Assembly: GCF_006345805.1 (NCBI RefSeq)
Contig: NC_043025.1
Location: forward strand, 9,982,007 to 10,046,000
Direction of reading: 5' to 3'
DNA: 63,994 bases
Source of the DNA: Octopus sinensis
Lineage: Eukaryota
In this document: piece by piece, positions 35,757 through 41,831 of the stretch
How positions within the stretch are numbered: the stretch's first letter is position 1
Layout of the letters: every line of letters starts with the position of its first letter
Translations under genes and position numbers: made by a program
The notes under the pieces: generated by a model
Databases searched by the model: none
What the model was told of the DNA's origin: nothing
The model's input: the letters and a program-made list of their open reading frames with translations, nothing else

Positions 35757-35895
35757 ATCATCATCATCGTTTAACGTCCGCTTTCCATGCTAGCATGGGT
35801 TGGACGATTTTGACTGAGGGCTGGCGAACCAGATGGCTGCACCAGGCTCCAATCTTGATTTGGCAGGATTTCTACAGCTGGATACCCTTCCTAAT
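35757..35895 (-). mobile_element. Retroposon family F, 3' fragment
   Basis: atcatcatcgtttaacgtccgctttccatgctagcatgggttgg. Confidence 0.75.
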
Positions 35896-35899
35896 GTAA

Positions 35900-38800: not shown

Positions 38801-41800
38801 ATCTGATGTGCTGTGGTATGCTTTGCTGATCTTGAGAAAGTCTCATCTCCCTTCTGTCTTGAGACACCATCTGATGTCCTGTGGCATGCCTTTGCTGATC
38901 TGAGAAAGTCTCATCTCCTTTCTGTCTTGAGACACACCATCTGATGTGCTGTGGTATGCCTTTGCTGATCTTGAGAAAGTCTCATCTCCTTTCTGTCTTG
39001 AGACACCATCTGATGTGCTGTGGTATGCCTTTGCTGATCTTGAGAAAGTCTCATCTCCTTTCTGTCTTGAGACACCATCTGATGTGCTGTGGTATGCCTT
39101 TGCTGATCTTGAGAAAGTCTCATCTCCTTTCTGTCTTGAGACACCATCTGATGTGCTGTGGCATGCCTTTGCTGATCTTGAGAAAGTCTCATCTCCTTTC
39201 TGTCTTGAGACACCATCTGATGTGCTGTGTATGCCTTTGCTGATCTTGAGAAAGTCTCATCTCCTTCTGTCTTGAGACACCATCTGATGTCCTGTGGCAT
39301 GCCTTTGCTGATCTTGAGAAAGTCTCATCTCCTTTCTGTCTTGAGACACCATCTGATGTGCTGTGGTATGCCTTTGCTGCTCTTGATGATCTCATCTCCT
39401 TTCTGTCTTGAGACACCATCTGATGTGCTGTGGTATGCCTTTGCTGATCTTGAGAAAGTCTCATCTCCTTTCTGTCTTGAGACACCATCTGATGTGCTGT
39501 GGTATGCCTTTGCTGATCTTGAGAAAGTCTCATCTCCTTTCTGTCTTGAGACACCATCTGATGTCCTGTGGCATGCCTTTGCTGATCTTGAGAAAGTCTC
39601 ATCTCCTTTCTGTCTTGAGACACCATCTGATGTGCTGTGGTATGCCTTTGCTGATCTTGAGAAAGTCTCATCTCCTTTCTGTCTTGAGACACCATCTGAT
39701 GTGCTGTGGCATGCCTCTGCTGATCTTGAGAAAGTCTCATCTCCCTTCTGTCTTGAGACACCATCTGATGTGCTGTGGTATGCCTTTGCTGATCTTGAGA
39801 AAGTCTCATCTCCTTTCTGTCTTGAGACACCATCTGATGTGCTGTGGTATGCCTTTGCTGATCTTGAGAAAGTCTCATCTCCTTTCTGTCTTGAGACAAC
39901 CATCTGATGTGCTGTGGTATGCCTTTGCTGATCTTGAGAAAGTCTCATCTCCTTTCTGTCTTGAGACACCATCTGATGTGCTGTGGTATGCCTTTGCTGA
40001 TCTTGAGAAAGTCTCATCTCCTTTCTGTCTTGAGACACCATCTGATGTGCTGTGGTATGCCTTTGCTGATCTTGAGAAAGTCTCATCTCCTTTCTGTCTG
40101 AGACACCATCTGATGTGCTGTGGTATGCCTTTGCTGATCTTGAGAAAGTCTCATCTCCTTTCTGTCTTGAGACACCATCTGATGTGCTGTGGTATGCCTT
40201 TGCTGATCTTGAGAAGTCTCATCTCCTTTCTTCTTGAGACACCATCTGATGTGCTGTGGTATGCCTTTGCTGATTTGAGAAAAGTCTCATCTCCTTTCTG
40301 TCTTGAGACACCATTGATGTGCTGTGGTATGCCTTTGCTGATCTTGAGAAGTCTCATCTCCTTTCTGTCTTGAGACACCATCTGATGTGCTGTGGTATGC
40401 TTTGCTGATCTTGAGAAAGTCTCATCTCTCCTTTCTGTCTTGAGACACCATCTGATGTGCTGTGGTATGCCTTTGCTGATCTTGAGAAAGTCTCATCTCC
40501 TTTCTGTCTTGAGACACCATCTGATGTGCTGTGGTATGCCTTTGCTGATCTTGAGAAAGTCTCATCTCCTTTCTGTCTTGAGACACCATCTGATGTGCTG
40601 TGTATGCCTTTGCTGATCTTGAGAAAGTCTCATCTCCTTTCTGTCTTGAGACACCATCTGATGTGCTGTGGTATGCCTTTGCTGATCTTGAGAAAGTCTC
40701 ATCTCCTTTCTGTCTTGAGACACACACCATCTGATGTGCTGTGGCATGCCTCTGCTGATCTTGAGAAAGTCTCATCTCCCTTCTGTCTTGAGACACCATC
40801 TGATGTGCTGTGGTATGCCTTTGCTGATCTTGAGAAAGTCTCATCTCCTTTCTGTCTTGAGACACCATCTGATGTGCTGTGGTATGCCTTTGCTGATCTT
40901 GAGAAAGTCTCATCTCCTTTCTGTCTTGAGACACCATCTGATGTGCTGTGGTATGCCTTTGCTGATCTTGAGAAAGTCTCATCTCCTTTCTGTCTTGAGA
41001 CACCATCTGATGTGCTGTGGTATGCCTTTGCTGATCTTGAGAAAGTCTCATCTCCTTTCTGTCTTGAGACACCATCTGATGTGCTGTGGTATGCCTTTGC
41101 TGATCTTGAAAAGTCTCATCTCCTTTCTGTCTTGAGACACCATCTGATGTGCTGTGGTATGCCTTTGCTGATCTTGAGAAGTCTCATCTCCTTTCTGTCT
41201 TGAGACACATCTGATGTGCTGTGGTATGCCTTTGCTGATCTTGAGAAAGTCTCATCTCCTTTCTGTCTTGAGACACCATCTGATGTCCTGTGGCATGCCT
41301 TTGCTGATCTTGAGAAAGTCTCATCTCCTTTCTGTCTTGAGACACCATCTGATGTGCTGTGGTATGCCTTTGCTGATCTTGAGAAAGTCTCATCTCCTTT
41401 CTGTCTTGAGACACCATCTGATGTGCTGTGGCATGCCTTTGCTGATCTTGAGAAAGTCTCATCTCCTTTCTGTCTTGAGACACCATCTGATGTCCTGTGG
41501 CATGCCTTTGCTGATCTTGAGAAAGTCTCATCTCCCTTCTGTCTTGGGATCCAACAGACGTGCTGCAGCATATCTTTGCTGCTGTTGAGAAAGTCTCTTC
41601 TCCCTTCTCTCTCAAGATTCTATTTAACATTCTGCAACATGCCTTTGGTGATATTTGGAAAGTGTCAAGTCCCTTTTGTATTGAGACTCTGGCGTACTGC
41701 AGCATGCTTTACTAATGTTGCAAAAGTTTGGTGTCCCTTATCTCTTGAGACGCTCGCCTTTAGTTTTCTGCACTCCTCCTTGCTTTATAGGTGTTTCTGG

Positions 41801-41831
41801 AGAGATTACAATTTTTCCTTTGGTGGCACAT
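35900..41831 (-). pseudogene. Disrupted 5' part of a Helitron Rep/helicase gene: basic N-terminus, expanded STPR-like repeats, CxxC...CC motif
   Basis: Minus strand from ATG 41831: MCHQRKNCNLSRNTYKARRSAEN*RR, then diverged 23-aa units ASQEIRDTKLLQH**.., ESQYKRDLTLSKYHQRHVAEC*I, ES*ERREKRLSQQQQRYAAARLL, then (VSQDRKEMRLSQDQQRHTTAHQM)n, then ..GAAFRYDPSHSYKNDNSVQIGVLNSNCCLCKDLTFTLQMFCYQCC. From memory this resembles animal Helitron N-termini (AF.YDP..Y.....V.IG.M...C..C.A.KF......CC). No Rep or helicase motifs are present in the window. Confidence 0.7.
36203..41545. repeat. 69-bp tandem array, about 77 copies
   Basis: Unit tgtggtatgcctttgctgatcttgagaaagtctcatctcctttctgtcttgagacaccatctgatgtgc; 23-aa periodicity in the ORF track confirms 69 bp. 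Confidence 0.97.

What the first reader, a model, noticed from the sequence alone, without database searches (positions are those of the whole stretch)
35790..41831. A 5.3-kb satellite that is an expanded STPR-like coding repeat inside a Helitron transposase gene
Seen: one minus-strand frame of the 69-bp unit reads VSQDRKEMRLSQDQQRHTTAHQM (23 aa). The degenerate units beyond the array edge (41545-41770) read ESQYKRDLTLSKYHQRHVAEC*I and ES*ERREKRLSQQQQRYAAARLL. These are preceded by a basic N-terminus at ATG 41831, and the array is followed in frame by AAFRYDPSHSYKNDNSVQIGVLNSNCCLCKD...CC. Established: STPR ('score and three amino acid peptide repeat', Bombyx FMBP-1) is a 23-aa DNA-binding repeat of the form E(S/T)xExRxxRL. 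From memory, animal Helitron Rep/Hel proteins carry similar N-terminal repeats followed by an AFxYDP..IG..CxxC..CC segment. Inference: one repeat of a dead Helitron's protein-repeat region was amplified about 77-fold into a homogeneous satellite, with the older diverged repeats left at the edge as a record. FMBP-1 has only four such repeats.
Basis: partly seen in the sequence, partly recalled or inferred. Interest (0 to 1): 0.82.

Follow-up and report, generated by a model that had tools for sequence, protein, structure and literature searches.

The report
Helitron coding repeat blown into satellite
A dead, non-autonomous Helitron transposon in the Octopus sinensis genome has had one 69-bp unit of its leftover transposase N-terminal repeat amplified about 77-fold into a 5.3-kb tandem array. 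The same thing happened independently at several other copies, so this is a clear but fairly ordinary example of a transposon seeding satellite DNA.

Summary

1. There is no transposase gene here. The array sits in a non-autonomous Helitron (window 35276-43035, minus strand). It keeps only the 5' coding stub of a Rep/Hel gene: a basic start, about 4 repeats of 23 aa, and an AFRYDP...C..C...CC segment, fused through a (TA)n tract to a canonical hairpin + CTAG|T 3' end.
2. The family has over 1000 candidate copies. Of 30 sampled, 29 carry 0-6 diverged units. Expansion recurred independently at least 4 times (C1, C3, C8369, C9066), and the C3 array may reach about 36 kb.
3. "STPR" is only partly supported. 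The window's unit does not match Pfam STPRs, but the repeats at the same position in an autonomous Helitron of this genome do (60 bits).

Tail homology to Rep/Hel N-termini is solid (hhalign 97%). The array shows no sign of coding constraint. Satellites born from Helitron-internal repeats are a known kind; the coding origin of the seed is the new twist. Interest is moderate.

The parts
41832..43035 (-). 5' non-coding region of the non-autonomous Helitron. It is homologous to other family copies only from 43035 downward. The first ~190 bp of the family's 5' end (A|TATAAAACAAAGGAT(GT)n...) were not found in the window.
   Evidence: blastn to family copies; family 5' boundary from the alignment
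41753..41831 (-). Remnant start of the Rep/Hel ORF: ATG at 41831, basic N-terminus MCHQRKNCNLSRNTYKARRSAEN* (already carries stops). It corresponds to the family's M(S/P)PKKK..NLSRNTYKARRSAENRR.
   Evidence: L020, L024 and L071 show the intact version
41552..41752 (-). Three old, diverged 69-bp units (types Ua, Ub, Uc of the family) with stop codons and a frameshift. These are the pre-expansion repeats.
   Evidence: units 1-3; matched to ancestral unit types in short copies
36258..41551 (-). Homogeneous array of 77 units of 69 bp, reading VSQDRKEMRLSQDQQRH(T/A)T(A/G)HQM. Mean identity to the array consensus is 97.4%. Variants lie in blocks, and about 27 units carry small indels.
35955..36257 (-). 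Terminal unit (type Ud; its 5' half is homogenised with the array), then the linker LNAKSLKRCLSHQIAQRSNRIARRNRPHTNSLFTTPG, then the tail AAFRYDPSHSYKNDNSVQIGVLNSNCCLCKDLTFTLQMFCYQCC. The tail is homologous to the Cys-rich N-terminal segment of Helitron Rep/Hel proteins.
35898..35954 (-). End of the coding stub (TFLYNLFQHE) and the family's (TA)n tract. This is where the family departs from autonomous Rep/Hel sequence, i.e. the deletion junction.
   Evidence: alignment of 12 copies; sequence
35325..35897 (-). ~573-bp SINE-like insertion into the (TA)n tract, including a 184-bp x2 tandem at 35326-35697. It is not part of the Helitron family.
   Evidence: The same repeat occurs at 17966-18438 and 29034-29574.
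35276..35324 (-). Helitron 3' terminus TACAAACTATGCCACTTTAATCCTGAGCAATGTCAGGTATCTCTGCTAG. It has a 5-bp hairpin (35288-35303) 12 nt from the end. The final G of CTAG is at 35276 and the host T at 35275.

Best explanation
Window 35276-43035 (minus strand) is an old, dead copy of a high-copy non-autonomous Helitron of Octopus sinensis.

The family is a deletion derivative. It keeps the 5' region and the first ~150 codons of a Rep/Hel gene: a basic start, about four 23-aa STPR-like repeats encoded by 69-bp units, a linker, and the AFRYDP...C..C...CC segment. This stub is joined through a (TA)n tract directly to the Helitron 3' hairpin and CTAG end.

After this copy inserted, one internal unit type was amplified in place to 77 copies. 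The unit resembles the terminal repeat. The likely mechanism is unequal sister-chromatid or homologue exchange, or replication slippage, seeded by the pre-existing short tandem run, followed by local block duplications and homogenisation. The result is 5.3 kb of non-coding tandem DNA. The three older units were left at the 5' edge, and the terminal unit stayed fused to the tail.

Shown: the anatomy, the family membership, the homology of the tail, the short ancestral state, and the independence of expansions at other loci. Inferred: the recombination mechanism, the timing, and the lack of function.
For: - Array and frames.
- Family size: the 80-aa tail has over 1000 candidate sites, with 150 of 150 scored at E<1e-18.
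- Helitron ends: copies share ...TTAATCCCGAGCAATGCCGGGTATCTCTGCTAG followed by T and then unrelated flanks. The window has its own such end at 35276.
- No Rep/Hel in the window: tblastn of an intact 1846-aa Helitron protein matches only its residues 345-525.
- Tail homology to autonomous Rep/Hel N-termini: hhalign Prob 97.1%, E 7e-11 with the repeats excluded; tblastn up to 48% identity, E 1e-8.
- Autonomous Helitrons here have the same plan: repeats, then AFxYDP/Cys segment, then Helitron_like_N, then PIF1.
- Ancestral state: 29 of 30 other copies have 0-6 units at 65-93% match. The window's edge units correspond to family unit types Ua, Ub and Uc.
- In-situ and recurrent: the other arrays (C1 65 units, C9066 44, C8369 82, C3 at least 131) are flanked on both sides by family sequence. 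Each has its own consensus, 83-97% identity between arrays against 97-99.6% within. They are scattered on the tail tree among short copies, and starred branches force at least 4 gains.
- No coding constraint: stops in the N-terminus and old units, many indels, 3 synonymous to 8 nonsynonymous variants, and no protein match in 5.8 billion sequences.
Against: - The window copy's 5' terminus was not found; homology starts about 190 bp inside the family.
- The family's 5' end begins TATAAAAC rather than the canonical TC.
- The 3' hairpin is short and not distinguishable from shuffles.
- No autonomous parent sharing the family's non-coding DNA was found among the 20 autonomous loci held.
- The tail tree is star-like with few resolved nodes, and its bootstrap had not converged.
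- Array length and the 1-bp indels come from a single assembly and could not be checked against reads.
Confidence: 0.85

Rival explanations
1. The array was already expanded in a master element and arrived by transposition; it was not amplified at this locus. The different arrays would then be copies of one expanded subfamily, later homogenised separately.
For: All expanded arrays amplified the same unit type. C1 and C9066 group together on the tail tree and their unit consensuses are 97% identical, so at least that pair may share an expanded ancestor or be a segmental duplicate.
Against: Expanded copies do not form a clade. C3 pairs with short copy L054 and C8369 with short copy L071 (both 100/99 support). 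The C1/C9066 clade contains short copy L016. The window is unresolved among short copies, and at least 4 gains are forced. Between-array consensus identity of 83-90% is as low as between ordinary copies.
Confidence: 0.07
2. The array is, or recently was, a translated gene: a domesticated STPR-repeat protein with about 77 repeats, with the frame breaks being long-read assembly errors.
For: No substitution creates a stop in the VSQDRKEMRL... frame in any unit. Most frame breaks are 1-bp deletions in homopolymers, a typical long-read error.
Against: - The N-terminus and the three old units carry substitution stops (TAA, TGA).
- There is no downstream Rep/Hel or other domain.
- Four of six frames are stop-free anyway.
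- Variants are 3 synonymous to 8 nonsynonymous, without codon-position bias.
- No protein in the 5.8-billion-sequence collection matches.
- Indel frequency differs between arrays (window 36%, C1 about 10%), which argues for real mutations.
Confidence: 0.03
3. The 69-mer is a host satellite that a Helitron captured, as is usually assumed for Helitron or Helentron central repeats, and only looks like a coding repeat by chance.
For: Helitrons are known to capture host fragments, including tandem repeats (review PMC12628747). The unit does not reach the Pfam STPRs threshold.
Against: - In short copies the units lie in frame between a Helitron-type basic start codon region and the Rep/Hel-homologous tail.
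- Every autonomous Helitron family examined in this genome has 23-aa repeats at exactly that place, and one scores 60 bits on STPRs.
- All six arrays inspected lie in this family's context.
Confidence: 0.03

Closest known systems
Satellite-like central repeats of non-autonomous Helentrons/Helitrons (Cg_HINE of Crassostrea gigas, PMC7492417; DINE-TR1 of Drosophila, cited in review PMC12628747)
   Same: A non-autonomous rolling-circle element with conserved ends carries a short internal tandem run. The run is dispersed genome-wide by transposition and occasionally expands into longer arrays.
   Different: Here the internal repeat is demonstrably the transposase's own N-terminal coding repeat (69 bp = 23 aa, in frame with a Rep/Hel start and Cys segment), not captured or anonymous non-coding sequence. 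The element is a canonical Helitron (CTAG end, one 3' hairpin), not a Helentron. Expansion is rare (about 1 in 30 copies) but reaches 5-36 kb.
STPR domain (Pfam PF21107; Bombyx FMBP-1, four 23-aa repeats, from my own knowledge), reported as an accessory domain almost exclusive to canonical Helitrons by HELIANO (PMC11417382)
   Same: Same 23-aa period, the E(S/T)xExRxxRL-type pattern, and an N-terminal position in Helitron Rep/Hel proteins. An autonomous Helitron family of this genome scores 60.2 bits on PF21107. About a fifth of related animal Rep/Hel proteins carry it.
   Different: The window's unit does not match PF21107. The best sister array reaches 24.5 bits against a cut-off of 27. The array is non-coding DNA now, not a protein domain.
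Tandem arrays of truncated Helitrons made by aberrant rolling-circle replication (Xiong et al. 2016, as summarised in PMC12628747)
   Same: Helitron-associated tandem DNA.
   Different: There the repeated unit is a whole truncated element with multiple 5' ends. Here a 69-bp internal unit is repeated inside a single element with single flanks, so rolling-circle re-initiation is not needed to explain it.

Membership tests
Helitron (canonical, HLE1), non-autonomous copy | 3' terminus CTRR preceded by a short GC-rich hairpin | tested here: met
   Family...CCCGAGCAATGCCGGGTATCTCTGCTAG. Window: CCTGAGCAATGTCAGGTATCTCTGCTAG ending at 35276. The stem is only 5 bp. Its arms change together between copies, but the folding energy is not better than shuffles.
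Helitron (canonical, HLE1), non-autonomous copy | Insertion between host A and T without target-site duplication | tested here: inconclusive
   The 3' flank is T in 13 of 14 copies with a recognisable end, and in the window. The 5' flank is A in the 3 copies with an unambiguous boundary. The window's own 5' end is missing, and no empty site was available.
Helitron (canonical, HLE1), non-autonomous copy | 5' terminus TC | tested here: not met
   The family's 5' boundary reads A|TATAAAACAAAGGAT. The TA-rich context makes the exact first base ambiguous.
Helitron (canonical, HLE1), non-autonomous copy | Sequence homology to a Rep/Hel protein, or shared ends with an autonomous partner | tested here: met
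   The coding stub is homologous to Rep/Hel N-termini (hhalign 97.1%; tblastn). Rep and PIF1 domains are absent from the window, hence non-autonomous. An autonomous partner sharing the ends was not identified.
STPR repeat domain (Pfam PF21107) | Score above the Pfam gathering threshold (27 bits) | tested here: not met
   Window unit x6 and the real ORFs: no STPRs hit at E<=10. Short family ORFs: none. C8369 array unit: 24.5 bits. C1 unit: 10.4 bits. L047-type autonomous Helitron N-terminus: 60.2 bits.
STPR repeat domain (Pfam PF21107) | Tandem 23-residue period with an E-[ST]-x-E-x-R-x-x-R-L-like core | tested here: met
   Unit = 69 bp = 23 aa. Family consensus ESQxRREMRLSQDQQRHAAAHQM. It aligns in register with Pfam-positive Helitron STPR units, but the match is weak (Prob 11%).
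STPR repeat domain (Pfam PF21107) | Sequence-specific DNA binding | not testable with these tools
   Needs a biochemical assay on an intact autonomous copy's N-terminus.
Satellite DNA (classical sense) | Long homogeneous head-to-tail arrays | tested here: met
   77 units at 97.4% identity to consensus. C3 array: at least 131 units at 99.6%, with hits spanning ~36 kb.
Satellite DNA (classical sense) | High genomic abundance and heterochromatic or centromeric location | tested here: inconclusive
   Only about 7 arrays of 3-36 kb were seen, and the searches give lower bounds. Chromatin state is not testable.

The most novel reading that the evidence does not exclude
The N-terminal STPR-type coding repeat of Helitron transposases may be a general, recurrent seed of satellite DNA. 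On this reading, non-autonomous derivatives scatter thousands of short 69-bp runs through the genome, and these repeatedly and independently expand into arrays of up to tens of kb. That would give a concrete origin, transposase coding sequence rather than host capture, for at least some of the 'central tandem repeats' long noted in non-autonomous Helitrons. The same instability also acts on autonomous copies (5, 12 and 19 units in near-identical elements), where it would vary the length of the transposase's DNA-binding domain.
Probability: 0.3. Interest if true: 0.55.

Novelty: new variant of a known kind. Interest (0 to 1): 0.4.

Why it matters
Transposon-to-satellite transitions are well documented, and Helitron or Helentron internal repeats are a textbook example. 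The origin of those internal repeats, however, is usually left open or put down to capture of host DNA.

This locus and its relatives preserve the whole series in one genome:
- intact transposases with in-frame 23-aa repeats;
- a deletion derivative that carries the repeats as dead coding sequence in over 1000 candidate copies;
- at least four independent expansions of one unit type into arrays of 3-36 kb.

That makes the birth of a satellite from a protein-coding repeat directly traceable. It also suggests a check for other taxa: is the period of Helitron central repeats a multiple of 69 bp, and do they read as STPR-like? It does not reveal a new kind of system.

Tried and rejected
- Pfam on the window's unit, real ORFs and edge peptides at E<=10: no STPRs or Helitron hit, only noise.
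- Pfam on ten short-copy ORFs and array consensus units: only the C8369 unit approached STPRs.
- A search of 5.8 billion proteins with the window's 330-aa ORF found nothing.
- Unit-level profile comparison with Pfam-positive Helitron STPR units: in register but not significant.
- Search for Rep or helicase downstream in the window: absent.
- Search for the window copy's 5' terminus: not found. A SINE-like repeat abuts the element at 43035.
- Search for an autonomous parent sharing non-coding DNA with the family among 20 held autonomous loci: none.
- A strict higher-order repeat in the array: not present, only variant blocks.
- tRNA scan of the window, for the tRNA-like tandem repeats: none called.
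Full report
**Observation.** Tandem Repeats Finder reports a single array at window 36207-41612: period 69 bp, 78.6 copies, 96% matches, score 9694.
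- the unit frame VSQDRKEMRLSQDQQRHTTAHQM;
- the degenerate edge units ESQYKRDLTLSKYHQRHVAEC*I and ES*ERREKRLSQQQQRYAAARLL;
- an ATG at 41831 opening a basic peptide (MCHQRKNCNLSRNTYKARRSAEN*);
- a final ORF (35790-36782) that runs in frame from repeats into ...PGAAFRYDPSHSYKNDNSVQIGVLNSNCCLCKDLTFTLQMFCYQCC.

Cutting the array into units gives three old, stop-bearing units (41752-41552), 77 homogeneous units (41551-36258), and a terminal unit fused to the linker. The array is not one ORF. About 27 of the 77 units carry 1-2 bp indels, mostly in short homopolymers. Variants lie in blocks: TTAHQM type in units 5-44, ATGHQM type in 45-63, a 3-unit CAAGCC block, then TTAHQM again. There is no strict higher-order repeat. 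Four of the unit's six frames lack stops, and within-array variants are 3 synonymous to 8 nonsynonymous with no codon-position bias. Open frames inside the array are therefore not evidence of coding.

**Genome and organism.** The window is C29:9982007-10046000 of a 2.72-Gb, 13,516-contig assembly. An intact Helitron protein from this genome is 95% identical to "uncharacterized protein LOC115228835 [Octopus sinensis]", which lies on a 61,622-bp contig, the same length as this assembly's C8713. I take the organism to be Octopus sinensis. The window has no conventional gene; all ORFs of 170 aa or more are low-complexity or repeat-derived.

**What the flanks are.** The 80-aa tail is itself a high-copy family: 1042 first-look candidates, with 150 of 150 scored at E<1e-18 and 59-81% amino-acid identity, apart from the window's own site. 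Aligning twelve copies shows that homology ends about 300-340 bp after the start of the tail. After a (TA)n tract the copies share ...TTTTAATCCCGAGCAATGCCGGGTATCTCTGCTAG, followed by T and then unrelated sequence. That is a Helitron 3' end: a short hairpin, CTRR, and a host T. Among 30 copies, 14 have a recognisable end, and 13 of those are followed by T.

The window's copy has its own end...CCTGAGCAATGTCAGGTATCTCTGCTAG|T, with the final G at 35276. It is separated from the tail by a ~573-bp SINE-like insertion into the (TA)n (about 35325-35897), which contains the 184-bp x2 repeat TRF found at 35326-35697. The hairpin is only 5 bp. Its arms differ in a compensatory way between copies (CCTGA/TCAGG, CCCGG/CCGGG), but it does not fold better than shuffled sequence.

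Upstream, family homology runs about 1.75 kb from the tail to a boundary A|TATAAAACAAAGGAT(GT)n. This is not the canonical TC. The window's copy matches only from 43035 downward. There another SINE-like repeat abuts it, and the first ~190 bp were not found. The element therefore occupies 35276-43035 on the minus strand.

**What the family encodes.** Read in the tail's frame, the best-preserved short copies (L020, L024, L014, L054, L057, L071) give this plan:
- M(S/P)PKK(K/R)..NLSRNTYKARRSAENRR;
- about four 23-aa units: Ua ESQEIRDMRLSQDQ.RHAAACQM, Ub ESQ.RRDMTLSKDHQTHAAACQI, Uc QSQERRERRLSQHQQRHA.A.QM, Ud ESQ.RREMRLSQDQQRHAAALNA;
- the linker ESLKQCLA.QITQRSNRIALRNRP.TNSFFTTPG;
- AAFRYDPSHSYKNDNSVQIGVLNSNCHLCKALKFTPQMFCCQCC;
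- after ten more codons, the (TA)n and the 3' end.

There is no Rep or helicase. tblastn of an intact 1846-aa Helitron protein against the window matches only that protein's residues 345-525, at window 36452-35967. The family is a non-autonomous deletion derivative that keeps only the 5' stub of the transposase gene.

**Is the stub really Helitron coding sequence?** Helitron_like_N (PF14214) has over 1300 candidate sites in this genome, with open frames up to 1846 aa. That 1846-aa ORF has Helitron_like_N, PIF1 and Pif1_2B domains. I read the N-termini of about 18 autonomous loci. Every one with an intact N-terminus has a basic start (for example MPPKKRRTLLSPR...), 3-19 repeats of about 23 aa, and then AFxY(D/E)Pxx(N)Y...IG.M...CxFCxAKKW.GE..G.CC..GKV.LPPL before the Rep domain.

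With the repeats excluded, a profile of 14 family tails against a profile of 8 autonomous segments gives hhalign probability 97.1%, E 7e-11 over 43 columns. tblastn of the family tail consensus hits that segment in 16 of 18 autonomous loci, best 48% identity at E 1e-8 (L035 type, NKAAFKYDPTVHYTDDNRVTIGAMTTECIYCKAKKW).

**STPR.** Pfam has an STPRs model (PF21107). Results by query:

| Query | PF21107 result |
|---|---|
| L047-type autonomous Helitron N-terminus | 60.2 bits, E 2.6e-16, 4 stretches (cut-off 27) |
| L037-type N-terminus | E 0.029 |
| L029/L033-type N-terminus | no hit |
| Window's unit and real ORFs | no hit at E<=10 |
| C8369 array unit | 24.5 bits, E 3.6e-5 |
| C1 array unit | 10.4 bits |
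| Short family ORFs | no hit |

A two-unit profile of family repeats aligns in register with Pfam-positive Helitron STPR units, but at only 11% probability. About a fifth of the best 120 animal Rep/Hel relatives carry precomputed PF21107. HELIANO lists STPRs as an accessory domain almost exclusive to canonical Helitrons (PMC11417382). My reading is that the window's repeats are the positional counterpart of the Helitron STPR region, with the same period and core pattern, but too diverged to pass the family's threshold. They are STPR-like, not a demonstrated member.

**Amplification.** Of 30 other family copies, 29 have 0-6 TRF-detectable units at 65-93% match, typically about 3. The window's three edge units are types Ua, Ub and Uc in the family's order. 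The 77 array units are one type, like the terminal unit Ud in the first ~50 bp but ending ...CATCAGATG. The true terminal unit's 5' half carries the array-specific variants.

**It is not a one-off.** Other arrays of the same unit type exist:

| Locus | Units | Identity |
|---|---|---|
| C1:205.87 Mb | 65 | 97.5% to its consensus |
| C9066 (C9336 and C9483 near-identical) | 44 | 98.7% to its consensus |
| C8369 | 82 | 97.3% to its consensus |
| C3:162.86 Mb | at least 131 | 99.6% to its consensus |

For C3, hits run from 162861951 to 162897861. That is about 36 kb if the array is continuous; continuity is verified only up to 162870900. Each of the three arrays tested is flanked by family 5' sequence and by the tail, and for C1 and C9066 also by the CTAG end.

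Array consensus units are 83-97% identical between arrays but 97-99.6% within them. On a maximum-likelihood tree of the non-repeat tail from 35 copies, the expanded copies are scattered among short ones. C3 pairs with L054, C8369 with L071, C1 and C9066 group with L016, and the window sits alone. Well-supported branches force at least four gains. The caveats are that the tree is star-like and its bootstrap had not converged.

Autonomous copies vary too. Three loci whose Rep domains score equally (211 bits) and whose Cys segments read the same carry 5.1, 11.9 and 18.9 units, and the largest has an internal frameshift.

**Timing (rough inference).** Terminal branches of the tail tree have a median of 0.078, and the window's is 0.067. 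This is close to the Jukes-Cantor distance of 0.09 (~25 Myr) at which octopus Helitrons are reported to have expanded (PMC13282606). Mean divergence of units from the array consensus is 2.6% in the window and 0.4% in C3. The arrays are therefore younger than the insertions, and C3's is very recent.

**Comparison with what is known.** Expansion of short internal arrays of Helitron or Helentron non-autonomous elements into satellite-like DNA is established (Cg_HINE in oyster, PMC7492417; review PMC12628747, which also cites DINE-TR1). Those internal repeats are generally treated as captured or anonymous. I found no paper linking Helitron STPR coding repeats to satellites; the search for STPR together with Helitron returns only HELIANO. 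Here the seed is the transposase's own coding repeat, and the whole series survives in one genome: autonomous element, deletion derivative, then independent arrays. I class it as a new variant of a known kind, of moderate interest.

**Limits.**
- Everything comes from one assembly, and no reads were available to check array length or the indels.
- The window's 5' terminus and the family's autonomous parent were not found.
- The recombination mechanism is inferred.

Noticed in passing
window 17966-18438, 29034-29574, 35326-35697; also 43035-43330: A SINE-like repeat (…GAGTTCAAATTCCGCCGAGGTCGACTTTGCCTTTCATCCTTTCGGGGTCGAT…) occurs several times in the window as 174-186-bp tandem duplications (2-3 units). 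One copy is inserted into the Helitron's (TA)n tract. A related piece abuts the Helitron's truncated 5' side.
   Followed up: partly
window 25459-26062 and 50644-51089: Two arrays (3.9 and 2.9 copies) of a 153-bp unit that begins with a tRNA-like sequence (GTGGAGGCACATGGCCTAGTGGTTAGAGC…GGGTTCGAATCTC). ARAGORN calls no tRNA. It is probably a tandemised tRNA-derived SINE.
   Followed up: partly
window 19294-20031: A 118-bp unit repeated 5 times, each unit starting with two or three telomere-type CCCTAA repeats. This is an interstitial telomere-like motif embedded in a longer tandem unit.
   Followed up: no
window 26842-28703; 837-2787: Other sizeable minisatellites: a 60-bp CA-rich unit x26 at 95% match, and a 76/87/428-bp CT/CCA-rich nested array. 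The window is unusually dense in tandem DNA.
   Followed up: no
window 3270-3830, 9956-10529, 44669-45490: Very long trinucleotide tracts: (ATT)~188, (TGA)~191, (ATT)~275.
   Followed up: no
L029 (C12599:164500-174400) 1874-3178; L033 (C12605); L034 (C8713): Near-identical autonomous Helitrons carry 18.9, 11.9 and 5.1 copies of their own 69-bp N-terminal repeat. In L029 the upstream ~14 units are read in a shifted frame (NKIEWQRLLVGNKSHKNRGNIGK). So repeat-number instability also affects potentially active elements.
   Followed up: partly
G000 C3:162861951-162897861: The same family's array on C3 is much larger and younger than the window's: at least 131 units at 99.6% verified, with hits spanning ~36 kb. 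Continuity between 162870900 and 162888436 was not checked.
   Followed up: partly
L058 (C2:193704898-193707537), about 200-230 in coding orientation: At the family's 5' boundary, this copy's flank is the reverse complement of the element's first 15 bases (ATCCTTCGTTTTATA|TATAAAACGAAGGAT). This is either a terminal palindrome or two elements head to head.
   Followed up: no
G000 C9066, C9336, C9483: Three unplaced contigs carry near-identical copies of one expanded array with identical spacing of hits. They are probably haplotigs or very recent duplicates, and related to the C1:205.87 Mb array (97% unit identity).
   Followed up: no
L050 (C9:87029200-87039100): A short-array family copy lies ~9 kb upstream of, and on the same strand as, an autonomous Helitron Rep domain with its own 69-bp x2.1 repeat. 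This is most likely two separate elements side by side.
   Followed up: no
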